This document shows, one piece after another, positions 5,939 through 61,317 of a stretch of 64,000 nucleotides of DNA. The number at the start of each line of letters is the position of its first letter. The stretch's first letter is position 1. This DNA is from Phallusia mammillata. Lineage: Eukaryota. Below the pieces are notes generated by a model. That model was not told the origin of the DNA, did no database searches, and saw only the letters and a program-made list of their open reading frames with translations. A program made the translations under genes and the position numbers. The DNA is taken from the NCBI GenBank assembly GCA_965637545.1, contig OZ281501.1, forward strand, positions 16,616,001 to 16,680,000, given 5' to 3'.

Positions 5939-6979
5939 AACTACATGGAACTTAAAAAGAAACGTCTTTATTTACAACTTGGTGATTTTTTTTGTCAATG
6001 TGCCTCGATTATCGCAGTTTGTCATTGTTTTTTTAAGTTACTTATATTTACAAAGCGGTAATGTGCCAAATATGTTACAAAAAACTTTACAGACATTTGG
6101 GGGTAAAAAGCATTGATTTATCTTAATTTACAGATGTTAAATGGGGCCATTATAGGTGATTGTGTTCAGGTTGTTTGATTACATAACTACTTTTCAAATG
6201 TCTGATTGAAAACCTGGAGATCTCCAGAAGTGCCTTAGTGTTTAAATAAACAAAGGCAAGTAATGTAGTGATGTAGGCCCAATAAGCAAGTGTAAGTTTA
6301 TGTAAAATTTGCTAACTAACAATACTACATTTTTACAACAATTGAATAGAACCCAATGTGTTTTTGTAATCCTTTTTATCAACAACACACAATAACAAAC
6401 GACAATTTTTAGGCCTACCAAATTGTCAACAAAAAAATTGTAAACAGCCACTTTGTGTGTAGAAAGAAACTAACTATTACAGTCTAGTTTGGATTAAGCT
6501 ACTTGCAGTATATTCAGTAAGCAAATATCAGAAAGCTGCCAGAAAAGTGTGCATTTTTATATTTAACTTATGAATTTAGTTTTCGAATGGCCAATTACCT
6601 TTTATTAAAAAGGGTAGCATGCTCTTAAGAGGGCGTTGGATAGGCCTTATTTGGAAAAAAAGTAATCACTTTAATTCAGTTTTAAAACGACTGTTTAAAA
6701 TGATTGAATAGTGCAAAAGGCGAATATAGCACTCTGGTGTTTTTACAATCAGCTCCAAATGATTCACAAGCTGGTTTAAACCTGTTAAAATCTTAATTTT
6801 GAGAATATGTTGAAATGCTTTTCAATTATCTGGTAAAACTGTTCCCCAAAAATGTTTTCTTTTTACGACATCACCATTAGACACGCTTGAGCAAGTTTTG
6901 CAACAAGACAACCAATCAGCGTTAATTCTAATTTACGCATGTCCAAGTCGTTCTTTGTTTAGATATTTGGCTAGAAAAG

Positions 6980-11276: not shown

Positions 11277-11282
11277 TTTATT
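11277..11282 (-). terminator. Probable polyadenylation signal of the giant VWF/mucin-like gene
   Basis: AATAAA on the - strand, about 130 nt downstream of the stop codon at 11414-11416. Confidence 0.55.
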
Positions 11283-11413: not shown

Positions 11414-12647
11414 TTAGCGACGGCCGAACGGTCGAGGTGTGGTTGGGGCCTCGCATTCTGTTACTTTGCATCCACAGCCCAACACGATATTTTGTGTGTG
11501 TGTTCGTGCTATGCTATCATCGCAAAGCATGAGGAACTCTCTGGGCATAGTCTCCGGCAGACAACACTTGCATTCGCCTGGGAAAAATAAATAAAAAATT
11601 GGTTACATTTGAAGTCAGACCAGATTGGTATCCGAGTAAAGATTTTGTGCTATTAACCTTGTACCATTATACCATAACATGGCACTTATACAAATCAGAA
11701 ATCGAAGCAATACATTGCCCCAAAATTATGGAATTGTCCTCCAAAGGAAGTTAAAAATACAATTTCTACAAGGGAATTTATTTCAATTATCACTTCTTTT
11801 TTGTGCATGATGCGATAGCAACAAATAACTGTAAAGTGGATATTTGGTTCTTAGCAAGGCGCTTTTTGTAGTTTTTCGACATTCCTCCACTCCACGTCAC
11901 CCCACAAGGTCTCACTTACCAACGCACACTTGATAAACCGCATGTTTTTTTGGCCACTAATGTTATTATTGCCGTTGTGTGTGTTCTTCCTTCCGGCGCT
12001 TAAAACTATCCGGTAGGGATTCTTTCGGTGCTTTCTTTTCCTGTCATACACTACCCTATTTCCCTAACATGGGTGGTTAGTTTATAGGCCCTCTCGACTG
12101 GTCCCACCAACGTTCCCTTCCGGTCGTGTTTATCAACACCGCACCAATTTTACTTTCCTGTGAGCCCCAGTCTCCTAACGCTTTATACTACTGTGTAGCT
12201 GCAGCGCGATTAGGTGTCGTCCACCAATTGTGCTTTTCACTGTTTTGCGCTCCATTACGCAGCTACTTCTGGCTTGGAGATCGTTTTTAGTCCTATTGTG
12301 TCGCTATGTTTCTTTCACCTAGCAAAATAAACTCAACTCAAGTTTGCAGCTTCTCGCTTTATGTGGGTGACTTTGTCTAAAAGTAAATGTTGCTGTGAAT
12401 AAATAAGGCTGAGTATTTATCGTTACTTTGTTGATTCCTGGGTAACCCTGACGTGCACCAACTAAAGATAATGGTTAATTACCTTCCATTTCCCCAGTAA
12501 CATCGTTGATTGTGTGTTTAGTGGGACAAGAACCGACACAGAAACTAATTTCAACTTGACCAGAAGTCCAGCATTCGTGGCTGTCAACTGTTGCGTTCAA
12601 CCTTGCTGTTTCAATTCCAACTTCACACGGGAAAGTGGTTTCCTCAC
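11414..12647 (-). CDS. C-terminal cystine knot (CTCK) exons of the giant gene
   Basis: Exons 12647-12483 and 11577-11414 encode [42 protein letters not shown]. This is the 11-Cys CTCK pattern (CxGxC, CxCC, CxC) typical of VWF and mucin C-termini. Confidence 0.88.
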
Positions 12648-15600
12648 CTATGGGTACAACACAAAATATTTACAGGAGAAATATTCTTTCGATATTAAAA
12701 CCTACAAACAAAACAAAAACCAAGTGTCACAATTTTTCAGTACTCATATTTTAAACACTCCAACTACTTTATGTCATTCAGCAATTCTTGAATCCAAAAC
12801 TTACAGTATTTGCAGCAGTTATCGGTTGAGCTGTTGGTTCTTTCCTTTCCACCCTTAGCAAGGCATTCAGCTAAGTCAAACGGAGGACATGCATATTTTT
12901 CGTAAGCATTTATGTAGGGACAGTTGGATGTTTCGTTTACCGCACATGCGGCCGCACGACAGCGATCATCCAATCTTATGCTTGTGTTGACCTGAACGAG
13001 AATGTGTTTTGATTAAATTTGATTAAAATCGCGTACAAGTTGGTCCTTATAAGAATTGACTTTTGTAATAGGCCTTGATAGCAGAGTTCTGCTCTCTGTT
13101 GAACTAAAAAACTGTTTTTGGTTTATTATCGCGTTTTTTTGAGGTTATTAAGATCGTTTGGTATAGAGATCCCTTTGTCCAAAACTGCAAAACCATCGGG
13201 ACCTTAAAAAACTAGCGTCCATGAAAACGTTCTCGTCTAAACGAAAGATACCATCTGAAATATTTGTATTTAAACGCAAATATCTAATTTGAATTCAAAG
13301 ACTGTTGTTCTCTGTCATAATGAATACCACTTACCGGATATTCGACGTTTTCCATTACACATTTATCGCACTCGCATGTGTATTGCGGGCAGTAACCGGA
13401 GTTGGTTTGAATGCGTTTCTGGCCAAGTTTGCAAGTGAAATTCCATTGTTCGCACGGCGTGCACTCGTAACTTGGACAGCAGGGACCCGTTACATTGTTT
13501 CGTTGTTGTATCTAAAAAAGATATGCGGTTAAAGAATGGATCGGTAACAACTAAGATATACTGTGTGGAAGACATGCAATGGAAATAAACAAGCAAGTTT
13601 ATGCCTTTACAAAGCAAAACAAGTGCCTGTTACTACATACGCAGTTGACGTTTGACTTGATTCGGAAATTGCGAAAACAGTTTGTAAGGATGTTCATTTA
13701 CGATTGGGCTTACCGTTGTTTTTTCATGGCCAACTGGGCAAGAGAAATCATCCCACTGATCGCAAGCAGAACTTAGGGTCGAATCATCTTCACAAACACA
13801 GGAGTATTCGGGGCAGCAGTCCCTGGTGTTCTCTATTGTGCCAGTCCGCACTGACTGCATGTATTTCGGACATGTCTCATTTTCAGTTACGTTGAAGCAG
13901 GAAAGTTCCAATGCCATCTCTTCCTTGCACACACAAGAGTAGCCTTGACAACAGGGGTTGGAGTCAGGTGTTTGTTCAAACTTTATTGCCATCTGATAAG
14001 GCGTGCAGTGAATATGCTCATAAGCTGTCTCCGAATCACACTGCAATCTTGGATCGTTTGTGGTGGTTTCAACGCGACATGTCGTGCTATTCTCCGGGTC
14101 CTCATGTAATGGAGAGCAACTCTTCGTTATCATACAACCGTCACCCGCATCTATTTTCCGAGTTGTCCCAATTGCTACAGGTTTACCGTTGATCATACAC
14201 ACGTCGCATATACAACTGTATTTCGGACAGCAATTGTTTGTGAGTGGATCTGTCTCGGAGGACTCAGATAGAGAATGGTTTGCTGGACACATCGGTTTGG
14301 TACAGTTGTCATGGCTGTCTTGGCATACAATTTTGTATCGAGGACAACATTTCTGACCCGGGTTTTCTTCAATTGTCTGAGGCTCGTACTTTTCATACGG
14401 CATAAGAGGTGTAGGGTAGGGTGTGTACTCTATCGGGCATTGAGAACAGGTGCAGTTGTAGTAAGGACAGCACTGTCCATCAACTGGGGTACGTTGGCGT
14501 TCTTCTCCAAAACCACATTCGATGTTGTAGCCTGAGCAATGCGAATCTAGTTCGGGTTGTCCGTAACACTCGCACGTGAGAGTTTCACAACAGTTGTTGG
14601 TGACTTCATATGTTGAGTTCATTCTTCCCTCCATGTCACATTGTTTTTCAGTGACCCTAGACTTTGGACAATTCTTCATCAACATGGTTTCGTTGTTGCA
14701 CACGCATTTATATTCCGGGCAACACTGTTCTGATGAAGATTCCACAAGCTCAGCGTGTTCGTAACCTTTCAGGCAGTTGCCCTCAAATGTGTCCTTGTCT
14801 ACACACGACAAACTTTCGTTGTATGTTACTGACATGGTGTAACATGAATCGGCTTGCTGTGGCGCAGAGCAAGACCACGTGACTGTACATCCGTTTTCGG
14901 TTCCGTTAAAGTATTCACCAACATTGACACGTGAATTGTCAGGCGCTTCGCAACTGTCGCAGATGCAGTTCCATTTGGTGCAACAATCATCTAATGTTGT
15001 GATATCTTGTGCCAAGTAACCTGGATCGCACTCTGGTTTGTTGTCGTCGCACGTTTTGCAAGTACAGTCGTACACTGGGCAGCAAGGACTGTCAGGATTG
15101 GTACCGGGTTGACTTGTTATTGTCACTTCCCTGTCATCCCTGGTGCATGCATCGTTGGTTGAATTGTATTCGGGACAAAGATTTTTAAGTTGCTTTATGT
15201 CCTCGTTGCATGTGCAGTTGTATGTGGGATAACATCGTTCCTCATTTGCAGGATATTTAGTCTTCATCTCGCCAGGATAATCGCATGTTATTTCCTCATT
15301 TACTCGGGTTGTGTTGCACTCTATGAAATGAAAGTAAAGTAATTTGAAACTTTTCTATTAAACTCACATATATTAGCTCATTCCAAAATGTTTCCATTTC
15401 GTATCAGATGCAAAATCCATGTGAAAAACACACATCGCAGGAGATTATTGACCTCCCTATTTGAGCTATACGTGTAATGGTACTTACCACAATCATAGTC
15501 TGGACAACATTTTTCGTTTTCTATTTTCACAGCATATTCTCCTTCTCGCTTGCAATGGCGTGTCTCGAATTCTTCTTTGGTTGTACAGTTGAACGGTACT

Positions 15601-18600
15601 AAACAAAATCGCAAAGTAAAGTCGTTAGTTGACTGAGTAAACAGAATGCAAGCAATCTGGTTTCAGTTCGTTATTGGCGATTACAAATATGTTAGCACTT
15701 CACAGGTTTAAAAAAATGTTTTAGTTTAACAGTAAAAACAATTTTCTTACCACAATCATATTCCTCGCAGCAAGGTTCAGGGTCTTCGTCGGGACTTGCG
15801 TATACCTTCTTACTCTGGGTAGTGCAACGAGGACAAACCTCCGATTCGCAAACAGGAAACGTTTCAGGTACAAAGCAACCATCTTCACCGCGGGCTGTGT
15901 TCCTGCATGTGTAGTTTCTAAGACATCTGTCATCGCCTCTTGCCTGCCAGGAGCTGTCAACTTCTCGAGTGACGTTGTTGTTATCTTTGCACGACGAACA
16001 CACGCATTTTGATTTCTTGCAGCCGCAAGTATCTGTTTCAGATATCTCTTTGTAGCCATCTGGGCACGAAGATACCTGGAATAAACAATTTTTTCAACTG
16101 TTTTGGTGCCTAAACATCACTTGGTACAGCGTACAATACTAGGGTTTGTTTCTCTATTTCTGTGTTTGCGTACAAATGATTGACACCTGATATTGTAAAA
16201 GTAAAATACTTCTTGTTGGGAGTTGGCTTAGGAATTGTTATATGTGTCCTCCTTGTGTGGACTGATTCTACATGTTTAATGTTTGTTTATTTTAACATTT
16301 TTATCTAATTGGCCACAATGTTTCACGAATATTACAGATATAACTGAAATGTTCATCCAATGTTTTAAACAGGCTTTTTGTACCTGTGATTGACATGATT
16401 TGCATACACAAGCATAGTCAGGACAGCACGGGTTAGATGATGTAGTGTTGAGTTCTACAACTTCACGATTGTCATCAAAACAACTGATAAAGGCATTCTG
16501 ATATGTATGACATCTATTCTGATATTCTGTCGAATCATTGTAACATTCACAACGAGTACAAAGTCTCGAGCCTTCGAAATATTCCACCTGCTTCTGTCCA
16601 GGATAAGAGCAAGTTTCATTGCGGCATGCTGGAAGATAATAAACAAAAAATAATTTAGTAACATCAAGTTTTCATGCAACGGGCCCAGTATTTGCCCGAA
16701 ACAAGTAATTTTGATTGTTTAAAGGAGCTAACATAGAGAGGACTATTTTGGAGATCAGCACTTTAAATATGAGTAGTTATTTGTTTGCATTGTTTGTGTT
16801 ACACGTTCTTTTTTCATTCCAAGCATATGAAGGTATACTTTTGTTGTTTTCAAATGTTCACAACGTGTTTTTAAAGGAAACATTCAACGGCAAGTGCTGC
16901 AATTAAAATAGGATACGTTTTGTTACCCTCTCTTGGTCTTTATTGTATGTCAAAAACATCTGTACTTGAAAATAAATAAAGCTAAAGCAAACCCAAAAGT
17001 TTAGTTATTTTATAATTTTCCGGAAGTGTACTTACCGCAGTCGTATTTTTTGCAACAAGATGAAGTGTCTGTCTCTACTGTCTCACGGTTGTTCGGCTTA
17101 CAATTGTGAAAGTCGAACTCATCTTTGCTCTCACAGGTCAAACTCTCGTTTTTGTAAACCGTCAGCTCGTAACATGACTCTCCTGCTTTTTTGTTGTCTG
17201 AACACATGTATTGTATCAAGCATCCATTGTCATCGGTCATATTCACTGAAGAGCCACGGGATATGAGGGTACCGTTGCCTATGTCACAAGAATTGCAAGT
17301 GCAGTTTGACCAATTGGAACAACAGTCTTCATCGGTTTTCAGATCCTCTGTAATGTAACCAGTCTTACAGCTTGGTGGCGATGAGTTCTCACATGTTTTG
17401 CAAAAGCAGTTGTATTTCGGACAACATGGGGAGCTTGGGTCGCTTCCTGCTGGCTCCGATTCCACTGCTTTCTTGTCAGACGTACAATTTGCTTCTTCAA
17501 ACTGTGTGGCTGTTTGGCAATCCATCCGAGGGTCGTAGGTTGTTACTGGTGTGCGGCATGTGGTCGTATTATCCGGGTTCTCATGTTGAGCGGAACAACT
17601 CTTCGTTATCATACAACCTTCGCCCACGTCCTCATTCCAAGTTTCATTGATCGCTACAGGGTTACCGTCGATCATACACACGTCGCACACACAGCTGTAT
17701 ATCGGACAGCAGTTGTTGGTGAGTGGGTCAGTCTCGGTGGAAACAGATACAGAGTGGTTTTTCGGGCATTCCGGTTCGGAACAGTTGTCATGGCTTTCTT
17801 GGCATACAATTTTATACCGAGGACAACATTTCTGAGCCGGATTTTCTTGTATCGTCAGAGGCTCGTACTTTTCATACGGCTTGAGAGGTGTAGGGTAGGG
17901 TATGTACTCTATCGGGCATTGAGAGCAGGTGCAGTTGTAGTAAGGACAGCACTGTCCATCAACTGGGGTACGTTGGCGTTCTTCTCCAAAACCACATTCG
18001 ATGTTGTAGCCTGAGCAATGCGAATCTAGTTCCGGTTGTCCGTAACACTCGCACGTGAGAGTTTCACAACAGTTGTTGGTGACTTCATACGTTGAGTTCA
18101 TTCTTCCCTCCATGTTACAATCTTCTTCAGTGACACTAGACTCTGGACAATTCTTCATCAACATGGTTTCGTTGTTGCACACGCATTTATATTCTGGGCA
18201 ACACTGTTCTGATGAAGATTCCACAAGCTCAGCGTGTTCGTAACCTTTCAGGCAGTTGCCCTCAAATGTGTCCTTCTCTATACACGACAAACTTTCGTTG
18301 TATGTTGCTGACATGGTGTAACATAAATCGGCTTGCTGTGGCGTAGAGCAAGACCACGTGACTTTACATCCGTTTTCGGTTCCGTTAAAGTCTTCACCAA
18401 CATTGACACGTGAATTGTCAGGCGCTTCGCAACTGTCGCAGATGCAGTTCCATTTGGTGCAACAATCATCTAATGTTGTGATATCTTGTGCCAAGTAACC
18501 TGGATCGCACTCTGGTTTGTTGTCGTCGCACGTTTTGCAAGTACAGTCGTACACTGGGCAGCAAGGACTGTCAGGATTGGTACCGGGTTGACTTGTTATT

Positions 18601-51600: not shown

Positions 51601-54600
51601 CATGCCTTAGCATATAGTGCGACGACGCTGCAAAAACACTTGTTGCCCTCCTCACATGCACACGCGTCTTTCTTGCAGTTGTCAAAATATTTTTCCACCT
51701 CTACATGCTTTCTGCATTCCTCGAACACTTCGTCTTCCAGAATCAGGCAATCTTGCGTTGCTGCAATAGCTGTAAGATTTTGGTACATTATTGAAATATT
51801 GCCAAAAGGTTGCTGCAAATCTGGTAAATTAATTTTCAAATTGAATAAGATACTAGTTTTTTTCTTTAATCATACAGGTTTGCTGTGTTTCGATTTAATA
51901 CAACTGCAAATACTGAATGCTAGTTTATTGTCACCAACTTAGAAGTTATTAAAATTTCGAAAATGGCCTGCAAAATGTTACATGTGGACTACTTTTTCTT
52001 GTCAATCAATCAAGCAAAAATATAATTAACTAAAAATAGGATGAATGGTTGTATTTTAAGTCGCTTCGTTGAACTTGCAAAATCTTATAACCGCGTTAGG
52101 TCCATCAAAGTATTTCAAATACCCTTTTAGCATCAATTACCAACCGCCGATGCCTTTTACGGCTCAAGACACATGTACATGTAGTGTTACCTTCACTTAC
52201 AAAGCACTTTCAATTCAGGCAAACCCCTATTGAACTACTTTGGCATCCAGGAAATTAAACTCTTTGGGCAAAGAAACGGGTTCAAAGATTTTAAAGATCA
52301 TTTCCCGTTTATTATCTGCATAAATTCTGTGCTTTGGGAGAGGGTTTTGTTATTAAGGTTTTTTTGGTTTAAAATATTATTTGAAGGAAACTGACGTTTT
52401 CGTTCAACGTCAACACAACTCGCAATCAAACAGACGAAATGTTAAAACACGGATAAATCCTGTCCTAACCATAAAATGCTTTAATTACCGGAACCTGCTC
52501 CCATTCTTTGTGCTGACGCAAGAATGAAGCAGAGCGTTTTTGTTTTAGGGGACCAATAATTTTTCACACTACTTACATTTTTGGGTGTCGAATTTACAAG
52601 CGTCTTCCTCAGCAGTAGCTGGGTCAACATCAGGACAAGATGGCGGGTATTTCCATGAGTTACCGAAAACGATTGGTTGGGTTTCTAAGAAGCCGTACTT
52701 CGTTGTAAAATCGTCGATGGTTTTTGAGTTATACAAACCCACAAGTCCACGAATGTTTTCTGTAAAGTTATAACGGTTGCTGAAACAAAAGTCGGATTGA
52801 GTCAAATTAATTCGAAACTAGCCTGTAATTAAAAAGATGTTCTTCGTTATTGCGGACTTCAACTATACAGTCTTGAGACAAGGAGTTTTGAACTATTTTT
52901 TTTTCAGTACAGGTGTTTTACCACAGGAAAATTGTTTGCTAGATTCTCCTAAACCGCTTTATTTGATCCCATGACTCTGAACGGTAATCGTAAACCGACA
53001 TGCATATTGGGAGTAAATTGTCCATGTTAGTAATCAAGTGCGTGGTTTACGTGATCACGTAAATCGTCATGGGTAACAAATAAACCGCCGGGACGATATT
53101 TTCACAAACGTATAAGGTTTCAACGTCTTGCGATATTTGAGTCGCAAAGTTTTCTGAAAAACAACTGAAATTCCCTTTGCCCGTGAACGTCAGACCCACG
53201 CACTAGACGACTTCCGTATGGTTTAACGTGGCAAAACAAAACTTCATGTTATTCTATATTTGAACGTGCACAAGTCATTGTGGTATAACCCTCGTTTATT
53301 TCCAGTTGAGCATGAAAACCAAGAAGCTGTGGATGTTAACCAACCATGTAAAGTCTTCAACGTTATTGCCTAACAAAACCGAAATAATATTACTCATTGA
53401 CACCGAAGAGTCAGCGAAGTCTGGTATTTTGCAATTTTACGCTTAAATCACTTCACGGAATTATAACCTGATGACGTACACATGTTAACTTGCTGAAAGA
53501 AGTGTTTTTTTGCAAATTTATCTCTGCACTGTTTGCCACCTACGACAATGCGACGTTGTTTTCGTCTCTAAATCGTGCGTAACAAATGCTAAATCATTTG
53601 ACACGTTTTACAATAACATGTTATTTGTACTTGATTTTAGGAAACCGAAAGATGTGTCAAATGCGGTTGACTGTTTGACCTTTTCAAGGTTATTAATTTG
53701 GAAGTTTATATTTTTTACATTACTCTTTGATTGATCAATAAAAATTCTTTACTTATCCAACAAAGTCCGTTTAACTTTATTGGGGTAGTCTTGAAATTTA
53801 AACCCACTTACCTTGGAACGACTTTGGTACAGTCACTTGCACCGAGACACCGTCCCACAATACGCGCACTCCAGTTGGTCCAATGACAGCTTCGATGTAA
53901 ATTGACGACAGTTGATAAACGGTAATCTTGCCTGCGTTATAAGATACATTGTCATGTTGAATACTGAAAGCCGACATTTTGTGAAGTGGAATTTTCATTT
54001 TTTGAATACATGTGCGTGTGGGTGTGAATGGTATACAGTAGGTTTTTATGGAACAGTTTAGAAATACGAAGCACGAAAACAAAGTGAAGCAATAAATACC
54101 CGCAAAACATGCACGTTTCATTTTTTGACCGAGTCCAAGTTGATTAAAACAACAACCATTTTTAAGTAAATCTCAACGAACGAAACCACCGGGAAACTTC
54201 ATCTACTGGCGACCATCCAGTGGGACGGTTTCCCAGGTAAAGATAGAAAGAGGGTCTTGACAGGGTAAACATAGTCTGACAAGAATGCGCCGGAGTGGTG
54301 CAGCGTAAAAAGCCGCAGCCTACGAGCTCATTTGGAAACTACCAAAATGAACGCTAGTTTCATGTCGGATTTCATCAAGGTAATTGCATTTTTGCGGTTA
54401 AAAAGTGGGGTTTACCAAGTTCTTTCCGGGGCGTGAGACAAGGCCCATGGTACACTAAAGAGAATAATTTGCGCTTAGTTAACTGTTTCTAGCGAAGAAG
54501 TCACCCCAAAAGTCCCACCAGGTTTCAGTCTCAGATAGGCAATAATGTTTGTAAAACGGAGGGTGGTGAAGAATATTTACCGTTGCTGGTTGGTAGTTTT

Positions 54601-57600
54601 GCCTCTACGTTGTTCTGCACTCTGACTTCGTTGTTTTGTCCCAGGGTTACGTAGTAAGAGAACGAATCCCTGCTGTAGGTTACCAACACTTTTCTGCAAG
54701 ACAAAAAAATAAACAAGTAATAAACAAGTGTGTCAAAACGATATTTTTTATTCCTTTTTCATAAAACCAAATCACACTTACGAAAACCAAACACAAAATG
54801 TAAACAGAAAAAGCATTTGAAGTTTAACCGAACGCTGTTATCGTTATTGCATTCTTTTTTATTACACTCTTAACGCAATTAACATTACCAAACATTATGA
54901 TAAGCTCCTGCAAAAAGATTTAAATTTAACAAAAACACATCCAACAAATAAGGGCGTAATACAGACTTTACGGCATTTGCACGTTTAACCACCATAACGG
55001 TATTTTAGTTTCGTAACAAATAATATCAGCGAGAACTGGTCAAGCGAGACGTATTCGGGCTTTGCAAACGTAAAGTCAGCAGCGTTGCACAAAGCCAAGG
55101 TAAAATAGTTTGACATTACCAAAGCATTTTTTCTCGCACCTTATACATGAGTACTGAGAAAGGTGGCCACATTTCTCGATGGTGACATATATGGCAAATG
55201 AAGGCTCCGCCGATGTGTCTTCAGCAAACATATACTCACACTGACTGCCGGGAAAATTGTACCAAGTGCTGTCCAATGTTCGAAAGTGAGCAAAGCCAGA
55301 AGCAACGGCCACGCCTATACATTGTAAGATCGAAGCCGACTTGGTTAAATGTGATTTGTAATGCCCAACGCTGAAATCATTAAGTTCAGAATCCCCATCT
55401 TATGTTTAGTTAGATTTGTTCTATTGCTGTTATTTATAGTTAATTGCAAACTACTGTTGCATCCTATTTATTGATAAAGTTAATTGTTAACGAAAACGTT
55501 TATTGTTATATATTGTTACTCACTTGGACAATCCTTTTTAGCGATTTCCCATTCAGAACCTTTGCAGAGTCTAAAGAACAAAAATAATTGAATGAAAATC
55601 AAATGGTGATACTTACATAAAAGTTGTAATAACCAAAAAACTCCAAATTTCTTAAATTAAAGGTGCTGTATTCTACTGTACAATACAATCTGTCGATATT
55701 AAAGACCCAAATGCAGCGAGGTTATATTTCTTCACAATCAGCTTTGAAAAAATGCGCCGAATTTGCGTGAGCGCAAACACGTGGCATGACGGGAGCGACT
55801 ACCTTTGCAATACGAGACGGCTAAGTCAGGTTTGGAGTGACATTGGTAGAGTGCGGTTTTCAACAGATCTCTGGTTGTTAGCAAATTGTCTACGTGGCAA
55901 CGTTGCTACTGTTATGTGCAACAGCCCTTTTTAGATTTACCAGCTGCCATTCAGATTAATAGAAAACTACCCATTCGGCTTGTAAATCGATAATGAAGGT
56001 TAACCATATTACCTTAAATCAACTAGCGTTAACTTTGAATTTTTTTTTGTGGAGGTGTGTGTGTGCTAATCTTATGTTACTTCGTAAAATAAAAAAAATG
56101 ACATTCCTATAGCGAATTCAACGTTTCACGGATCCGGATACGGCGGTTTCAGAAATGGAAGTGGTACATAACCTAAATTTGTTCAAGTGAAAATTTTCAC
56201 GGTCCAAAAGCCGAAGCCGGATACACGTAGGTTAATTATTGGCAAAAATCAGGCCTCTTGGGGAATAAACGTGACAAAATAAATACACGTTTTTTTGCAC
56301 TTCACGCACCAGAAACGAAAACCCTCTCTTACTCATACCCATGTATGTCAAGAATGGTTACCACCTGAACACGTTCTTCTGTTTTGAAATTTTATGATCG
56401 GGGACGTGTTCAGAAATGACTAACCGGAACTGTACTACTAAGTAAAACAAACAAGTATTTAAATTTCCCAAAGTTTGATTTAATGCGGCTACTCCATGGC
56501 ACACGTTTTTAGCACGCTAATGAAACCACATGAAAATAAATCGTATGAACATTCTAAACTGCGTTGATTTGCTTTTTGGTAGTCTTTCTTACCTTGTTTC
56601 GCATGCAGAAGTGATCTCCTGACCCGGTGGGTAACTGTTGCCAGCATATTCGCAAGGACAATCGTCTTTTGCCACGCAGTTTGAGCCATCCCAGTAGGTA
56701 CCTGCAAACAAGGCGGGTTAAATCAACCGTGACGACTCATACCAACTGACGTTACGTTACGACACTCGAAATAGGATCTAAACGCCAGTGACAAATCATG
56801 GGAATCGTTTTAAAGGATTAGTGGACAAATAGAAGTGGAAAATTATGTTTATCTATTCTAAGCCTATATCCTGGTCCGTGACTTAAGTCGAATCCCCTAG
56901 ACAAATTTTGGCCGATAAAACGCTTATGGACAAAATCGTGCAAGTTTTCAGCGTTTTTCAACTTTTGTAATTTGTTGTACATAATAATTTTGGTGAATAG
57001 AACAGCAAAACATTAAAAAACTAGACATATATAAGCTATTGCTACCAGTCATAATATCAAGTTTATAGACCTCTTCTAGCAATTGTATTTTTATTCCGAC
57101 GTTTCGACGTCCTATATTAAAAACAAACTAGTTTGCGCGCTATGACACAAGGTGAAAATCTATTGACCTTCGCTAGATTTCAAACCATTCAATTCTTACC
57201 TTCTCTACAATGACACCCGCTCGAGCAGTCCGTGCCACAGTTGCCGTTGCCAGGGTTTTTACACGATGACAGGCAGCTTGGACCGCATTCCAAATATACC
57301 TGATTGCCCGGGCATGGGCGACCTACAAAAAAGGAAAGATACAACTCAATGACGTCATCAATCATGACGTCAAAACGCATACTTACTGCATGAGGTCGGT
57401 GTTCTCCAGTTACCGACTGTATAGTCTGCTCGGGCGCAGTCCTCGGCGTACCTGGACACGATAGCGCAGTGGCAATCTTGTCGATTATTGAGTCCGCATC
57501 TACATGCATCTTGAATGCAATTATCCCAAGATCCGGACACTAGGATGTGTGGGTGGCACTCCGAAAAAGCCGACGATTCCAGCACGGCACAAACTGATCT

Positions 57601-60600
57601 GGCAAACTTAAAACAAGGTTATTGAGTACTGTAATGACAAAAATGTAGATATGCTGAAGAGCAGCCAAAAAGGCAAAAAATCATGTATAGAAATAGTCTG
57701 TAAAATACGTAAAATGGTTTACATTTCCTTTTCTTAGAAGTAACGACTATGACCATACCACTGCTCTTTTTGAAGGTGAGTTTGTGGTTGCAAAAATATA
57801 AAGGTACATACTGCAATTAGCTCCGTATTGTAGCAGAGATCATCCTTTATTTGCCGTCCTGCGTTGCAAGTCTCATCAGGGTCATCCTTTTTCCAGCGCA
57901 CATCTAAAATGATGAAATGAAATAAATATAAAGCAAAAAATGTATGAAAAAAGCAAAAACAAAATCATACCAACACTAGTATAGTCAAAACCATCGGTAT
58001 ATCCACACAATCCCTCTACGGTACTTGCAGGGTCACTGCTGACTGTCAAATCGATGGAAAACAGCTTCTTGTCAATCGTCAGTTTTTGTCCATCAAACTG
58101 CACGAAGATGTTCCACTTAAATTCGGTTATAGTTATTCCATACTTTGCGAGGGGCAACGTGGCTCTGAAACACAAAACGCGGCAAAAAATCCATCAGTAC
58201 TTTGTGGCCGTGATTTGTGCAAAAATATAAAAGTTTAGGCATTAAGCCCCCCGTACAAACTATTCCCTACAACAAAAATACGATAAACGAAACAAACACG
58301 TCGCACGTTTTGTAAACCCTTGTGGGCATGGGCACGTACAAATTTTAAACCAGAAATTTTTTCTCATATACTTAAAATTTTAGCAGAACCTTCATGTACT
58401 TCATTTAAGTAGATAAAAAAGTATTTTTTTGCCATTCGAATAGCTTTATTCCTCTACTTTGAAAAAGAGTAAAACCAATTTTTTATAAGTCGAGCAAATA
58501 CAATGACGAGCAACTTACTCAACATTGTCAAACAGGATCGTGCCGTTTCTGTAGATTGTAACTGTGGAGGAACCGGATTCTACAGTGACATATTTAATAC
58601 AACCGGTGTCGTTCGCTGGACAGTTTGGGCGATAACGAAGCAGAACCTTAAGAATGTGAAATAGCATTTGAATCGGATTAAGGCCTACATATAAATTCAA
58701 AATAATGTGATGTAAATATGTAACATGAAAAAAGGTAAATTTGATACGTGTCGTAAAAACAGATTACCATAAAAAATGTTTTATCTCGTGAAAGTAACTA
58801 AATATGCACAGTTAAGCACGAACTGAAGTAACTAAAAAAATCTCCAAGCCAGAAACAATTCTTTCGTTAACGGAATAATTTTATGCTTTATAAAAGTAAA
58901 ATATATTATTTACGAAATCATACTTATTTCGGCTAAAACTCACAGTGAAGGAGTTGTCTGCTGTACGTTCTATTGACTGAGCCAATATGTACTGGCAAGA
59001 ACCAAGAAACTTGATCCCAGTGTTATCAAAAGTCCGAATCTCGCCATCGCCGTACACGGAACAGGTTTGCAACGGAAAAACAAAGTCATCCGGGGCAAAA
59101 TGTACTGCGTCGTTTTCGTGGTAGCTACCTATAAATAAGAATAAAAAGTTATGTTTGTACATAGATTAATAAGAATTATATTTAAATAAGAAATGCCGGT
59201 GCTATATATATTCTTTTCAAAAAATATAATCTTACAAATTGCCTAAAAAGCACTAATTGATTCACGTATGCTAAAAGGTTCAGCTTTTATACTAGTTGGT
59301 CTTTGTAGGAGATTCAATGCGTTAATTTTCATGAAAGTTTCATTTTCTATATGGCCAGTAAGTTACAGTACTGCTGGCAAAAAAAAGTTTGGGCATAAAA
59401 CTAAACAAATAAGGTAGAAATGAAGGTGACATACTATAGGCACATCTGTAACCGCCCAAGCCGTGAGCGCATGTGCATTCTGAGATACCCGAACAAACTC
59501 CTTCGTTGAAACAGAAGTTTTCCGGGCAGTCGGCTGCAATGGCAAAAAAATTATAGTAAAACAACGAAGCACTGGGTTGTCAACTTTTACTCACGCTCGA
59601 CTTGAAAGCGGTAGGTGAGCATAAAGCCTTGAGCGGATATGAAACCGTTTGACACAAAGTGCAACCGGACTGAGTTACCAGTTGACGGAATGGTCAAACC
59701 CTCTAGTTGCATGGCACAGTGCCGTACGTCGGGCATGTTTGTACCCTCCACAACAAGATAGTCGTCTCTGCAACAAAGTGTAACACTCTTTTTGAATCTG
59801 GTGAATTGTTATCACTGAACGCTAAAGTTAATAAATTTTGCCTTTCTTACCAGGCTGTAGGCAAGCACAAGCAGTTAAAACGTTTAAATACTTAAAATAT
59901 GTGGATGTCTTATTCTATGACATTTGCTCATAATCGGAGTGAGCAATTGATCTGGCCGCAGTATTTGGTTGTAATTTATCACAGAACGTAATACAGAGCA
60001 AATCTTGTAGTTGGATAACGTACCGACACGAGTCTGAATCTTCAAGGTTAAAGTCTTGGAAAATGAGTTCTATGTGGTAATGCTCAGGAGCCTTTATTTC
60101 CCATGTGCAGTTGAGACCAGCGGCATAGGCATTCGGATATAAAGGAGTTTCAATCGCTCCTTTATCGTCCGTTAAAACCCCACCACAATCTGAAACGCGA
60201 AAAGATTTGATTATGTAACACAAAAAACGCAACGTCGATAACAAAGGTTCGTAATTTGGTGTATATACACTATGTACAGTTGTAAAGGTATGACAAAACG
60301 TATAGCTCATTTTTCACGCAATTTGGCGTAGATTAAAAATGAAAATATGCTAAACCATTATTCCCCTGTGTTTATCACGCCACATAGTACGCATCTTTTA
60401 TTCGACATAAGTTAACATAGAACCCGTTTCTGTTGCAGCCTTTAAACCCCACTCAATGCAAACCAGGCATTGCACCTAACCTTTGTGAGGTTTGTTTCGC
60501 ATCGTTAGTTTGGTACAAAACGCCAAGACAACGTTGTTTAATCCTACAAATGTTGAACAAGCCCACCAGTGCTTTCAGTTTTAACTTGGTACAAGATCGG

Positions 60601-61317
60601 CTGGTTTATGCCTGAATTAATAGAAATCCGCAAGTTTACCCGACAGAATTATTTGTTTAAATAATTTTGTGCGCAATGCTAGCGAACTTAAGCACCATAT
60701 ATCCTATTTGCTAATGAAAGCAAGTTAAAGGACGAGTTAGTTAATGCTGATCCGACGCATATATGCCATTTAAACCACATGTTTACCTCTAAATAATGCG
60801 ATGCCGGTTAGAATCCAAGCCCTTGAGTTTGGAAGAATTACGGTACGATTAACGTCATATTCGTTTGACGCACAAAACCGCATAGCGTATAGTTTAAATC
60901 AGGTCCACAAAAGAGTTGTATACAGTAATCGACCGACACCAAGCGTGAAGAAATCGCGTCGGTGCTAGAGTCTAATAGACAAAACATCGAACAATATGCA
61001 AAGATTTGCGGCACTCACATGGTTTACAGAAACAACTTAAACTTACTTTCTACCGGGCATGGTGTCACCATGCACGTTGCCGATTCAAGGTCGTCATCCG
61101 GATTCTGGGAACAAGGGGTTGTGTCACTAAAATCAACCGCCTTACAATAACGACGTCGAACACGAGTAGCTTGGCCGCAAGTTTGAGTGCAAGACCCCCA
61201 AGGGAGCCATTCTGACCAGCTTCTTGCCTCTGATAACCCTACGAAAGCCAACATTGTCGCAAAAAGCAGAGCAGTGGCCAACCATGGGCGCTTAGACACT
61301 CTCTTCCCCCAAACCAT
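11414..61317 (-). CDS. Giant secreted von Willebrand factor/gel-forming-mucin-like protein; 70 exons, 21,864 nt CDS, 7,287 aa (manual model)
   Basis: Exons in transcript order, all GT-AG with matching phases and no in-frame stop: 61317-61047, 60189-60024, 59767-59595, 59533-59435, 59128-58944, 58646-58519, 58164-57971, 57903-57812, 57606-57387, 57322-57200, 56701-56593, 55570-55524, 55314-55140, 54693-54581, 53931-53812, 52759-52577, 51769-51554, 51328-51200, 50951-50837, 50584-50544, 46297-46160, 45787-45661, 45168-44895, 44518-44309, 43688-43452, 43086-42930, 42572-42437, 42026-41935, 41534-41296, 41052-40864, 40582-40393, 39975-39745, 39387-39200, 38754-38644, 38256-38128, 37703-37515, 36819-36630, 36492-36369, 36036-35913, 35614-35416, 34950-34800, 34723-34558, 34201-34105, 33748-33557, 33142-32783, then five four-exon units (see the array feature), then 15320-13714, 13511-13335, 12991-12805, 12647-12483, 11577-11414. 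The summed length is a multiple of 3. Domains were recognised by motif: signal peptide, TSP1, CUB, EGF, four VWD-C8-TIL assemblies, CysD, VWC-like modules and CTCK. Confidence 0.9.
11640..11820 (+). mobile_element. 3' remnant of a LINE (CR1/L2-clade-like) in the last intron
   Basis: The frame from 11678 reads [42 protein letters not shown]. This resembles the conserved post-RT C-terminal motif (..Y.GPKLWNSLP.E.K...S...F...L...L) of CR1/L2-type ORF2. Confidence 0.55.
13714..32715 (-). repeat. Intragenic tandem array of a ~3,479-bp four-exon unit (5 full copies plus a partial sixth)
   Basis: Exons A (1764 nt), B (245), C (325) and D (111). Copy 1: 32715-30952, 30544-30300, 29991-29667, 29514-29404. 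Copy 2: 29236-27473, 27065-26821, 26512-26188, 26035-25925. Copy 3: 25757-23994, 23586-23342, 23033-22709, 22556-22446. Copy 4: 22278-20515, 20106-19862, 19553-19229, 19077-18967. Copy 5: 18799-17036, 16628-16384, 16075-15751, 15598-15488. Partial sixth A exon: 15320-13714. Exons and introns are near-identical between copies. Confidence 0.97.
33166..33421. mobile_element. Composite hAT MITE in the intron just upstream of exon 45
   Basis: Degenerate left TIR CATCGGTTCCTAACC and right TIR GGTTGGGAACCGCTG, with a perfect 8-bp TSD CTTTAGTG on both sides. An extra internal right-TIR-like AGTTGGGAACCATTG lies near 33335-33349. Confidence 0.8.
33557..36492 (-). CDS. D4 assembly (VWD4-C8-TIL) of the giant gene
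   Basis: [22 protein letters not shown]; [16 protein letters not shown]; C8 [18 protein letters not shown]; [26 protein letters not shown]. Confidence 0.88.
35051..35222. mobile_element. hAT-type MITE
   Basis: TIRs CAGTTTTTTTTAAGGT ... ACCTTAAAAAAACACTG with a perfect 8-bp TSD GTTACAAA. Confidence 0.8.
37054..37398. mobile_element. hAT (Charlie-like) MITE
   Basis: TIRs CAGTGGTTCCCAACC ... GGTTAGGAACCACTG with a perfect 8-bp TSD CACTATGG. Confidence 0.88.
39541..39646 (-). mobile_element. Penelope-like retroelement terminal fragment with a degenerate hammerhead core; second truncated copy at 57028-57115
   Basis: The - strand reads CTGATAA..GAC..GTCGAAACGTC. About 70 bp of adjoining sequence (ATATAAGCT..CCAG.CATAATATCAA..) is shared with 57028-57115, which retains GACGTCGAAACGTCG. 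Confidence 0.5.
40864..41534 (-). CDS. Single CysD (Mucin2_WxxW-like) domain exons
   Basis: [54 protein letters not shown] matches the CysD spacing. The WxxW tryptophans are replaced by FSEY. Confidence 0.8.
41935..46297 (-). CDS. D'D3 assembly of the giant gene
   Basis: TIL' [18 protein letters not shown]; VWD3 [57 protein letters not shown]; C8 [14 protein letters not shown]; TIL3 [18 protein letters not shown]. Confidence 0.88.
43228..43312. repeat. 40-bp tandem duplication, probably inside a degenerate MITE
   Basis: CCGAAGCATACCGTGGTTTTCAAAATAAACCAGACCCGAT occurs twice in perfect tandem. Confidence 0.85.
43990..44117. mobile_element. Truncated hAT-like MITE (right end)
   Basis: Ends in GGACGGTATGGCAACCCTG (CAGGGTTGCCA-type TIR) with repeated GGACA motifs. 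No matching left TIR or TSD was found. Confidence 0.45.
45344..45632. repeat. ~56-bp intronic minisatellite, about 5 copies
   Basis: The unit AAATGGTTGTAGCAATGAATTTAAATGCGTATTTTTAACCAGACAAGTGATTTTTA starts at 45344, 45400, 45456, 45511 and 45567, with a partial copy at 45623. Confidence 0.9.
47804..47849. repeat. 23-bp perfect tandem duplication
   Basis: AAAGGGCAGGTGGCCATATTGAG x2. Confidence 0.85.
48288..48676. mobile_element. hAT-type MITE in the 4.2-kb intron
   Basis: Right TIR GGTTGAGAATCACTG, degenerate left end CAGTGGGACC, and a perfect 8-bp TSD ATTTAGGG on both sides. Confidence 0.65.
49200..49450. promoter_or_regulatory. GC/CpG-rich promoter-like island inside an intron
   Basis: CCACGTCACGTGG (CRE/E-box overlap, 49270-49282), CCAAT (49292-49296), tandem CCGGAAG/GCGGAAG ETS-type sites (49313-49326) and an oppositely oriented ATTGG (49385-49389). 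Confidence 0.35.
50544..55314 (-). CDS. D2 assembly (VWD2-C8-TIL-E) of the giant gene
   Basis: [55 protein letters not shown]; C8 [32 protein letters not shown]; [26 protein letters not shown]. Confidence 0.88.
55524..59128 (-). CDS. D1 assembly (VWD1-C8-TIL-E) of the giant gene
   Basis: [29 protein letters not shown]; C8 [35 protein letters not shown]; [28 protein letters not shown]. Confidence 0.88.
59435..61317 (-). CDS. N-terminal signal peptide, TSP1, CUB and EGF exons of the giant gene
   Basis: Hydrophobic leader [20 protein letters not shown]; TSP1 [22 protein letters not shown]; [53 protein letters not shown]; [27 protein letters not shown]. Confidence 0.9.

What the first reader, a model, noticed from the sequence alone, without database searches (positions are those of the whole stretch)
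11414..61317. A ~7,300-aa VWF/mucin polymer scaffold with no mucin (PTS) domain and no VWA domains
Seen: 70 exons join in frame into SP-TSP1-CUB-EGF-D1-D2-D'D3-CysD-VWC-like-D4-(Cys-rich array)-CTCK. Known: D1-D2-D'D3...D4...CTCK is the shared polymerising skeleton of VWF and gel-forming mucins, which carry VWA domains or long PTS regions between D3 and D4. Here that position holds only a 7-residue APTPTPP, one CysD and VWC-like modules, and more than half of the protein is a disulfide-rich array after D4. Inference: this is a covalently polymerising fibre or net protein of a different design from a glycan gel, such as a filter-feeding net, adhesive or tunic component. It may be an undescribed family member.
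Basis: partly seen in the sequence, partly recalled or inferred. Interest (0 to 1): 0.85.

Follow-up and report, generated by a model that had tools for sequence, protein, structure and literature searches.

The report
Giant sea-squirt VWF/mucin-like rod protein
A sea-squirt gene appears to encode a 7,284-residue secreted protein built on the frame of von Willebrand factor and gel-forming mucins, but with a very long chain of small disulfide-locked, N-glycan-rich modules after D4 instead of a sugar-coated middle; it is a new variant of a known family, and its tissue and role are unknown.

Summary
On the minus strand, one in-frame GT-AG chain of 70 exons runs from ATG 61317 to TAA 11414. It encodes 7,284 aa, and an AATAAA lies 132 nt after the stop.

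Exon-by-exon searches confirm this order: signal peptide, TSP1, CUB, EGF, D1, D2, D'D3, CysD, Cys-rich modules, D4 (with GDPH), a 4,731-aa Cys-rich array, and a cystine knot. There is no VWA domain. No Pro/Thr/Ser-rich open frame exists anywhere in the locus.

The array is five copies of a 3,479-bp four-exon cassette, 97.5-99.9% identical including introns, plus a diverged sixth big exon. Pfam and PDB sequence searches do not recognise its modules. AlphaFold models (pLDDT 86 and 88) weakly but consistently resemble VWC and fibronectin-I folds and the MUC2 VWC tail.

Among 1.84 billion proteins only about ten relatives appear. Those with a named source are ascidian, and none is characterised.

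My reading is a covalent end-to-end polymer of stiff, N-glycosylated rods. This is inferred from the conserved D3 cysteine, the cystine knot and the fold.

I found no RNA evidence, so "one gene" and any tissue role remain untested. A related Clavelina locus is annotated as three gene models.

Earlier first-reader notes of this scan cover the same cassette. The scan also reported other giant VWF/mucin variants elsewhere in this genome.

The parts
61047..61317 (-). Exon 1: start codon, signal peptide and one TSP1 domain
   Evidence: Pfam TSP_1 E 1.1e-8. The hydrophobic leader [31 protein letters not shown] was judged by eye.
59595..60189 (-). CUB domain in two exons (60189-60024 and 59767-59595)
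   Evidence: Pfam CUB E 3.8e-15 on profile positions 1-56. The second exon matches positions 81-110 weakly, E 0.043. The GTGAGT donor was read directly.
59435..59533 (-). EGF-like exon, phase 1-1
   Evidence: Six-Cys pattern [29 protein letters not shown] seen by eye. Pfam gave no hit on this 32-aa piece.
56593..59128 (-). D1 assembly (VWD1, C8, TIL, E), exons 5-11
   Evidence: Pfam VWD E 6.6e-8, C8 E 1.5e-17 and TIL E 8.6e-7. The site that is CGLC in VWF reads EGLCG here.
50544..55570 (-). D2 assembly, exons 12-20
   Evidence: Pfam VWD E 7.2e-6, C8 E 1.1e-18, TIL E 5.5e-5. The site that is CGLC in VWF reads GLVGLYN here.
45661..46297 (-). D' (TIL'-E'), two exons, after a 4,246-bp intron
   Evidence: Weak TIL hit on profile positions 35-55, E 0.006. 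Collinear with the D' region of the Clavelina locus. No furin site between D2 and D'.
41935..45168 (-). D3 assembly (VWD3, C8-3, TIL3, E3), ending in APTPTPG
   Evidence: Pfam VWD E 3.1e-9 and C8 E 7e-13. The best-scoring stretch of exon 43688-43452 lies in VWF D3 (i-E 3.8e-14; whole-chain E 4.7e-29). The C8-3 alignment keeps GDCECFC against VWF GDCACFC. This is the only CGLC in the protein.
41296..41534 (-). CysD-like domain
   Evidence: Pfam Mucin2_WxxW E 3.6e-4, 21.6 bits against a cut-off of 22.4. MUC5B CysD chain 8oer_I E 0.017. The WxxW motif is replaced by FSEY.
37515..41052 (-). Seven exons of Cys-rich modules of the same kind as the array
   Evidence: No Pfam hit. BLASTP matches to array regions of P0002, P0004, P0008 and P0024.
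36630..36819 (-). Cys-rich exon directly before VWD4, at the position of VWCN (VWD4N) in MUC2 and VWF
   Evidence: Assigned by position and Cys pattern. The VWCN naming is from PMC10082768. No Pfam hit.
33557..36492 (-). D4 assembly (VWD4 with GDPH, C8-4, TIL4), exons 38-44
   Evidence: Pfam VWD E 3e-11 and 6.5e-5, C8 E 3e-5, TIL E 5.3e-6. This is the only GDPH in the protein, at aa 1979.
32783..33142 (-). First array exon, outside the repeated cassette
   Evidence: Cys-rich with CCPEYECVC. No Pfam hit.
15488..32715 (-). Five tandem 3,479-bp cassettes, each of four exons (1764, 245, 325 and 111 nt = 815 aa)
   Evidence: Exact 3,479-bp period, 97.5-99.9% identity including introns. Splice sites read directly. 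25 NxS/T sequons per cassette against 10.4 +/- 2.8 in shuffles.
13714..15320 (-). Sixth big exon, diverged in its 3' part
   Evidence: About 80% DNA identity to the other copies. It is the best match to the single big exon of the relative in L001, 35% over 495 aa.
12805..13511 (-). Two C-terminal VWC-like exons
   Evidence: Collinear with the pre-knot region of P0002, P0024 and P0008, 34-45% identity.
11414..12647 (-). Cystine knot (CTCK) in two exons, and the stop codon TAA at 11416-11414
   Evidence: Pfam Cys_knot E 0.041. MUC2 CK E 0.063 and Norrin E 0.1. Exon 70 aligns to the knot of P0008 and P0024, which pass Pfam's cut-off at 31.3 and 24.6 bits. The two exons hold 11 Cys, with CxGxC, CxCC and CxC motifs, seen by eye.
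11277..11282 (-). AATAAA polyadenylation signal, 132 nt after the stop
   Evidence: Read directly.

Best explanation
This is one secreted protein of about 7,284 aa that belongs to the VWF/gel-forming-mucin family. It keeps the family's assembly machinery: D1-D2-D'D3 at the head, D4, and a cystine knot at the tail. It lacks both the sugar-coated PTS region of mucins and the VWA domains of VWF. The VWC-type tail after D4 is instead lengthened to about 4,700 aa, by five recent tandem copies of an 815-aa four-exon cassette. By analogy with VWF and MUC2, two chains would join tail to tail through the cystine knot, and dimers would join head to head through D3 disulfides. The product would be long covalent filaments whose spacer is a stiff, acidic, N-glycosylated chain of disulfide-locked modules rather than a glycan brush. 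Shown here: the domain order, the in-frame exon chain, the absence of PTS and VWA, the cassette amplification, the N-glycan sequon excess, and the restriction of detectable relatives to a few sequences, the named ones ascidian. Inferred: that it is a single transcript, that it polymerises covalently, and that the array is rod-like. Unknown: tissue and role.
For: An in-frame 70-exon GT-AG chain with start, stop and AATAAA. Pfam hits in the canonical order. D3 exons match VWF and MUC2 D3 best, and the cysteine aligned to VWF Cys1099 is kept. The C-terminal exons are collinear with homologues whose cystine knot passes Pfam's cut-off. Mucin-type marks are present: a CysD-like exon, GDPH only in D4, and no furin site at the D2/D' boundary. 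AlphaFold model 1 (pLDDT 85.9) has VWC domains matching across their whole length: CCN3 vWC Z 3.8 with 70 of 70 aligned, VWF C4 Z 3.1, collagen IIA vWC Z 2.9, VWF C6 Z 2.7, and FnI pairs up to Z 4.9. Model 2 (pLDDT 88.1) matches only MUC2 residues 4766-4873, which are VWC1/VWC', at Z 3.7 with 97 aligned. There are 25 sequons per cassette against 10.4 expected. PMC10082768 reports evenly spaced N-glycans on the MUC2 VWC tail that may restrict its flexibility. In a related Clavelina locus, D2, D' and D3 exons lie on the same strand, and the upstream gene model ends 558 bp before the array model. A Phallusia database protein (P0024) runs from TIL4 through an array to the knot in one open frame.
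Against: There is no transcript evidence. The two runs that hold the locus are genomic DNA, and the RNA-type runs touch only short interspersed repeats. No protein at 50% identity or more to the big exon is in the 1.84-billion library, so it holds no annotated or transcript-derived protein of this gene. The Clavelina relative is annotated as three separate gene models. Structural Z-scores are all below 5, a range where matches can reflect only a common arrangement, and Foldseek gave nothing for model 2. The CGLC motifs that VWF has in D1 and D2 (aligned) are absent here. The cysteine equivalent to VWF Cys1142 was matched only against a VWF sequence recalled from memory, since the TIL3 exon gave no PDB hit. 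Several small VWD exons are not recognised on their own.
Confidence: 0.6

Rival explanations
1. The locus holds two or more transcription units. For example, a TSP1-CUB-EGF-D1-D2 gene and a D'D3...CTCK gene could be split at the 4.2-kb intron, or the array part could be a separate gene.
For: There is no RNA support for any junction. The longest intron, 4,246 bp, sits between D2 and D'. The related Clavelina locus is annotated as three models of 564, 797 and 3,613 aa.
Against: Every junction is phase-compatible with GT-AG sites, and only one start, one stop and one AATAAA were needed. D1-D2 followed by D'D3 is the canonical order of the family. The Clavelina models are only 558 bp apart on one strand, which looks like an annotation split. 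ORFs in the long intron have no Pfam hits.
Confidence: 0.15
2. The VWC-like array works mainly as a binding scaffold for BMP/TGF-beta-type ligands, as chordin, kielin and crossveinless-2 do, rather than as a structural spacer.
For: The modules resemble VWC domains (CCN3, NELL2, collagen IIA vWC) in the fold search. From general knowledge, arrays of such domains bind BMPs.
Against: No Pfam VWC hit even at module level, and no sequence match to any solved VWC domain. The dense N-glycan sequons and the very recent five-fold copy gain fit a length or bulk role better than specific ligand binding. The flanking D assemblies and the knot are polymer machinery.
Confidence: 0.08
3. The gene is silent or decaying, and the intact array frames reflect only the youth of the duplication.
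For: No RNA was found. Cassette copies differ by 0.1-0.4%, too little to show selection.
Against: All 70 exons are open over 21.9 kb. Non-repeated exons keep their cysteines and 33-64% identity with loci in other ascidians, which requires long-term constraint.
Confidence: 0.05

Closest known systems
Human von Willebrand factor (VWF)
   Same: The order D1-D2-D'D3 ... D4, VWC domains, cystine knot. D3 exons match VWF D3 best (exon 43688-43452: whole-chain E 4.7e-29; D3 stretch i-E 3.8e-14) and keep the cysteine aligned to Cys1099. The tail is made of VWC-type modules.
   Different: No VWA (A1-A3) domains. No furin site after D2. No CGLC in D1 or D2. A CysD-like domain is present. TSP1-CUB-EGF is added at the N-terminus. 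The tail is about 4,700 aa, whereas VWF has seven C-type domains (C1, C2, C', C3-C6; PMC10082768). There is one RGD per cassette, but not at the VWF C4 position.
Gel-forming mucins MUC2, MUC5AC and MUC5B
   Same: D1-D2-D'D3, CysD, VWCN-D4 with GDPH, VWC tail and CK. No propeptide cleavage site. MUC2 residues 4766-4873 (VWC1/VWC') are the only structural match of model 2. PMC10082768 describes evenly spaced N-glycans on the MUC2 VWC tail.
   Different: No PTS domain at all: the richest 100-aa window is 35% Pro/Thr/Ser. It therefore fails the defining feature of a mucin. The bulk of the protein lies after D4, not between D3 and D4.
Ciona Ci-GFM1 (PMC6109156)
   Same: A tunicate member of the same scaffold (D1, D2, D'D3, D4, VWC, CK) with only a token PTS of 50 aa.
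   Different: Ci-GFM1 is 2,880 aa, carries chitin-binding and FN2 domains, and has two VWC domains. It has no long array and no TSP1-CUB-EGF head.
Clavelina LOC143464528 (XP_076818448.1) and Phallusia 'Neurogenic locus notch homolog protein 1-like' (P0024)
   Same: The same module family, with an array followed by VWC and a cystine knot. C-terminal exons are 32-45% identical and collinear. VWD/C8/TIL exons lie upstream in Clavelina.
   Different: Only 23-45% identity to this gene's exons. The Clavelina protein holds two D4-like VWDs by eye (one confirmed by Pfam). Both are uncharacterised.
Kielin/chordin-like proteins and BMPER
   Same: Long runs of VWC-type cysteine-rich repeats combined with a VWD domain (from general knowledge).
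   Different: They have one VWD, no D1-D2-D'D3 head and no cystine knot. They are signalling modulators rather than polymers. The modules here do not hit Pfam VWC.
SCO-spondin (Reissner's fibre)
   Same: A giant, cysteine-rich, secreted chordate protein with N-terminal VWD assemblies, TSP1 and CTCK that forms a fibre (from general knowledge).
   Different: SCO-spondin is dominated by LDLrA and many TSP1 repeats. This gene has one TSP1, no LDLrA hit, and does have a D4 assembly.

Membership tests
VWF/gel-forming-mucin superfamily (D1-D2-D'D3 ... D4 ... CK scaffold) | Three N-terminal VWD-C8-TIL assemblies, with D' before D3 | tested here: met
   Pfam VWD/C8/TIL in three successive groups. D' has only a weak TIL hit plus collinearity with the Clavelina locus.
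VWF/gel-forming-mucin superfamily (D1-D2-D'D3 ... D4 ... CK scaffold) | A fourth D assembly (D4) downstream | tested here: met
   Pfam VWD E 3e-11, C8 and TIL at 36.5-33.6 kb.
VWF/gel-forming-mucin superfamily (D1-D2-D'D3 ... D4 ... CK scaffold) | C-terminal cystine knot that dimerises chains | tested here: inconclusive
   Only weak direct hits (Pfam E 0.041; MUC2 CK E 0.063). The last exon aligns to homologues' knots that pass Pfam's cut-off. The 11-Cys pattern was seen by eye. The two exons were not joined for a search. Dimerisation itself cannot be tested here.
VWF/gel-forming-mucin superfamily (D1-D2-D'D3 ... D4 ... CK scaffold) | D3 cysteines that make intermolecular disulfides (VWF Cys1099 and Cys1142) | tested here: inconclusive
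   The Cys1099 equivalent is kept in a tool alignment. The Cys1142 equivalent was matched only against a remembered VWF sequence, because the TIL3 exon had no PDB hit.
VWF/gel-forming-mucin superfamily (D1-D2-D'D3 ... D4 ... CK scaffold) | VWC domains between D4 and CK | tested here: inconclusive
   No Pfam VWC hit and no PDB sequence hit. Predicted folds match VWC domains and the MUC2 tail, but only at Z 2.7-4.1.
Gel-forming mucin in the strict sense | At least one long Pro/Thr/Ser-rich, O-glycosylated domain | tested here: not met
   No open frame in the locus has a 40-aa window at or above 50% PTS. The richest 100-aa window in the model is 35%.
Gel-forming mucin in the strict sense | CysD domain after D3, and GDPH in D4 | tested here: met
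   CysD is borderline (Pfam 21.6 bits against 22.4; MUC5B CysD E 0.017). GDPH occurs only in D4.
von Willebrand factor orthologue | VWA domains between D3 and D4 | tested here: not met
   The interval is 552 aa of CysD and Cys-rich modules, and its introns of 138-696 bp are too short to hide a VWA domain.
von Willebrand factor orthologue | Furin cleavage site after D2, and CGLC motifs in D1 and D2 | tested here: not met
   The only R-x-K/R-R is inside the TSP1 domain, and the only CGLC is in D3.
SCO-spondin | Arrays of LDLrA and TSP1 repeats | tested here: not met
   One TSP1 domain only, and no LDLrA hit in any exon scanned.

The most novel reading that the evidence does not exclude
This protein is the filament of the endostyle's filter-feeding mucus net. 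Tail-to-tail and head-to-head disulfide joining of rigid rods about 0.3 um long would set the regular sub-micron mesh, which one paper gives as 0.6 x 0.4 um in Ciona (PMC12741560). The copy number of the 3.48-kb cassette would then tune mesh size between species or individuals. The rod length is my own rough estimate: about 5 nm per VWC-sized module, recalled from VWF electron microscopy.
Probability: 0.1. Interest if true: 0.85.

Novelty: new variant of a known kind. Interest (0 to 1): 0.5.

Why it matters
VWF and mucins share one polymerising frame and differ in what they carry between the ends: adhesive A domains, or a glycan brush. This gene shows a third solution on the same frame, a very long chain of small disulfide-locked, N-glycosylated modules, grown recently by copying a four-exon cassette. 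It gives a concrete molecule for asking how tunicates build non-gel extracellular filaments. One example is the regular filter net of the endostyle; my literature searches turned up no report of its protein make-up, and I know of none. It also shows how fast such genes change length. The module family is missing from Pfam and its relatives are unnamed or misnamed in databases, so it is worth defining.

Tried and rejected
**RNA support.** Both are genomic DNA, collinear through the introns. The RNA-type runs touch only short interspersed repeats.

**Sequence searches that found nothing.**
- A word-based protein search with the big exon.
- PDB sequence searches with the big exon, with a module profile, and with the TIL3 and first CTCK exons.
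- Pfam on the big exon and on single modules.
- Pfam on many small exons, where short pieces score too low.
- Pfam on ORFs of the 4.2-kb intron and of the flanking plus-strand gene.
- Foldseek with model 2.

**A caveat about Pfam nulls.** Whole-protein Pfam scans of the long Cys-rich homologues gave false blanks. Their sub-parts do hit Kringle and VWD. Whole-protein nulls on such sequences should not be trusted.

**Gene modelling.** My first two splice-chain runs were poor. One was over-trained on Cys-rich codons and gave 55 exons. The other padded frames with micro-exons and gave 76 exons.

**Literature.** Searches for an endostyle VWF-like or net protein found no matching description.

**Rejected identities.** I rejected SCO-spondin, otogelin-type and kielin-type identities on domain content.

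**Orthology.** I first took the Clavelina protein as the orthologue. I now treat it as a probable paralogue, because a Phallusia protein is much closer to it than this gene is.

**Joined model.** Exons were joined only inside local scripts, to count frame, length, composition and motifs.


Full report
**Observation.** The window has no N and is about 39% G+C. All coding signal of the finding lies on the minus strand. Stop-free minus-strand pieces between 61.3 and 11.4 kb carry a signal peptide with TSP1, then CUB and EGF, four VWD/C8/TIL groups, many Cys-rich pieces and a cystine-knot-like end.

I wrote a splice-chain search using GT-AG sites, codon log-odds and dynamic programming over phases. 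Its third version, with a minimum exon of 36 nt, returned one in-frame chain of 70 exons from ATG 61317 to the stop at 11414. Reading the DNA gave three corrections:
- The second CUB exon ends at a perfect GTGAGT donor at 59595.
- A 210-nt phase 0-0 exon at 44518-44309 supplies the middle of VWD3.
- A 36-nt optional exon was dropped.

The final model has 70 exons, all GT-AG, with 21,855 nt, 7,284 aa and about 812 kDa. The median intron is 332 bp and the longest is 4,246 bp, between D2 and D'. An AATAAA lies 132 nt after the TAA. It is still a prediction.

**Domains, searched exon by exon by reference.** Pfam gives the following:
- TSP_1 (E 1.1e-8) and CUB (E 3.8e-15), with the second CUB exon weak.
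- D1: VWD, C8 and TIL.
- D2: VWD, C8 and TIL.
- D3: VWD, C8 and the end of TIL.
- A borderline Mucin2_WxxW (CysD) match.
- D4: VWD, C8 and TIL.
- A weak Cys_knot match.

Among solved structures, the best-scoring stretches of the two later D3 exons lie in VWF D3, and MUC2, MUC5B and MUC5AC chains also score. The first VWD3 exon scores best against FCGBP and, within VWF, slightly better on D2 than on D3. The C8-3 alignment keeps GDCECFC against VWF GDCACFC, which includes the position of Cys1099. The CysD exon aligns to the MUC5B CysD chain at E 0.017.

Motif scans on the local model show several mucin-like rather than VWF-like traits:
- GDPH occurs only in D4.
- CGLC occurs only in D3.
- There is no furin site except one inside TSP1.

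PMC10082768 places the autocatalytic GDPH of MUC2 in VWD4.

**No PTS and no VWA.** From CysD to D4 the protein has 552 aa. The only Pro/Thr run is APTPTPG at the end of D3. Introns in that interval are 138-696 bp. No minus-strand open frame in the locus has a 40-aa window with at least 50% Pro/Thr/Ser. The richest 100-aa window of the model is 35%. ORFs in the 4.2-kb intron have no Pfam hit.

**The array.** After TIL4 come one unique exon and then five copies of a 3,479-bp cassette. Each cassette has four exons (1764, 245, 325 and 111 nt; intron phases 1, 0, 1, 1) and encodes 815 aa. A sixth big exon follows and diverges in its 3' part.

The copies are 97.5-99.9% identical including introns, with an exact period. 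This points to very recent amplification or ongoing gene conversion. The array is 4,731 aa, or 65% of the protein.

The array is built from 6-Cys modules of 33-47 aa (C...C...CC....C.C) and 10-Cys modules of 80-97 aa. The "CCPxYxCxC" ending occurs 71 times in the model. It is acidic. It carries 25 NxS/T sequons per cassette, against 10.4 +/- 2.8 in shuffles, with 0 of 2,000 shuffles reaching 25.

**What the modules are.** Pfam does not recognise them, either as a whole exon or one module at a time. PDB sequence searches with the exon and with a ten-row module profile find nothing.

I built two AlphaFold models on alignments of paralogous and homologous modules, and both are confident (pLDDT 85.9 and 88.1).
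- **Model 1 (a 6-Cys plus a 10-Cys module).** The all-against-representatives structural search lists fibronectin type I pairs (Z 4.9), NELL2 (4.1), CCN3 vWC (3.8, 70 of 70 residues aligned), VWF C4 (3.1), collagen IIA vWC (2.9) and VWF C6 (2.7). Foldseek's weak rows name the same families.
- **Model 2 (two 6-Cys modules and a 4-Cys piece).** The only real match is MUC2 residues 4766-4873 at Z 3.7 with 97 residues aligned. PMC10082768 assigns that stretch to VWC1 and VWC' of the tail. Foldseek found nothing.

All Z values are below 5, so this is consistent but weak evidence. My reading is that the array is the family's VWC tail, greatly extended and diverged beyond sequence recognition.

**Relatives.** A search of 1.84 billion representative proteins with the big exon gave 12 hits at E <= 0.001, the best at 36% identity. 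One hit, and a member of its cluster, are bacterial and spurious. The remaining hits are:
- Clavelina lepadiformis XP_076818448.1, "uncharacterized protein LOC143464528".
- A Ciona savignyi fragment.
- Single-exon ORFs on metagenome contigs that look like ascidian DNA.

A further search found a Phallusia mammillata entry named "Neurogenic locus notch homolog protein 1-like". It runs from TIL4 through an array to a cystine knot. The cystine knots of these homologues pass or approach Pfam's cut-off, and this gene's last exons align to them in order.

The Clavelina locus has D2, D' and D3 exons on the same strand, with the upstream model ending 558 bp before the array model. It is annotated as three genes.

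Two metagenome contigs are collinear with the linker, D4 and last big exon of this gene. They carry only one big exon where this gene has six, and a second D4-like assembly upstream. Copy number and even the number of D4 assemblies therefore vary in this family.

Earlier notes of this scan call this genome Phallusia mammillata (not checked by me). If that is right, the Phallusia and Clavelina proteins, which are 51% identical to each other and 23-45% to this gene, represent a paralogue.

**Expression.** The RNA-type runs touch only three short, very high-copy repeats. The 1.84-billion library holds no protein at 50% identity or more to the big exon. I therefore could not test the exon chain, the single-gene claim or any tissue.

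**Mechanism.** By analogy with VWF and MUC2, cystine-knot dimerisation and D3 head-to-head disulfides would give linear covalent polymers. Here the spacer would be a glycan-stiffened chain of disulfide-locked modules rather than a brush. PMC10082768 suggests that evenly spaced N-glycans restrict the flexibility of the MUC2 tail.

About 5 nm per VWC-sized module, a figure I recall from VWF electron microscopy and did not test here, would make each chain about 0.3 um long. This is the scale of the 0.6 x 0.4 um mesh quoted for the Ciona net (PMC12741560). I keep that only as the speculative novel case.

Points against the polymer reading:
- CGLC motifs are missing from D1 and D2.
- The structural scores are weak.
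- There is no RNA evidence.
- The Clavelina relative is annotated as separate gene models.

**Comparison with what is known.** Tunicates are known to hold many multi-VWD proteins, only some with PTS domains (PMC4948705). Ciona Ci-GFM1 has only a 50-aa PTS (PMC6109156). My literature searches found no description of this architecture or of an endostyle net protein. This scan also reported other giant VWF/mucin variants elsewhere in the genome.

**Verdict.** The gene is a new variant of a known kind, of moderate interest.

**Rule compliance.** Exons were joined only in local scripts, for counting. All database and folding queries were single exons, parts of exons, or stored proteins, given by reference.

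Noticed in passing
window 37070-37360, 39540-39680 and 41830-41873: Three short interspersed repeats inside introns. Summed contig depth is up to about 100-fold the flanking depth in the DNA runs. They are the only parts of the locus touched by the RNA-type runs. They are probably MITE/SINE-like elements.
   Followed up: no
window 45344-45632: A 56-bp tandem repeat of 5.2 copies at 88% identity, in the intron between D' and D3.
   Followed up: no
window 29991-29667 and the four matching exons of the other cassettes: Each cassette carries one RGD (WQARGDDRC) in the front part of a VWC-like module, five in all. One RGD in the unique sequence is not beyond chance: my rough estimate, from the residue frequencies, is about 0.2 expected. 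VWF's integrin site also sits in a VWC domain (C4).
   Followed up: partly
window about 1700-5950, plus strand: A multi-exon gene running towards the 3' end of the big gene. Its largest open pieces have no Pfam hit, and it was not identified.
   Followed up: partly
P0008 (2,328-aa ORF on a JGI metagenome contig): A relative with a Kringle domain (Pfam E 7.7e-20) and a glycine-rich stretch in front of the same Cys-rich array and a cystine knot, all in one uninterrupted ORF.
   Followed up: partly
L006 500-4500 with L002 10200-14800; P0002: Relatives carry two D4-like assemblies separated by array exons, whereas this gene has one. The number of D4 units is not fixed in this family.
   Followed up: partly
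P0024 (UniRef, Phallusia mammillata): A TIL4-array-cystine-knot protein is named 'Neurogenic locus notch homolog protein 1-like'. This looks like a misnomer caused by its cysteine richness.
   Followed up: partly
P0002 and P0008, whole-protein Pfam scans: hmmscan reported no family for these long Cys-rich proteins, although their sub-parts hit VWD (E 6e-13) and Kringle. Whole-protein blanks on such sequences are unreliable.
   Followed up: yes
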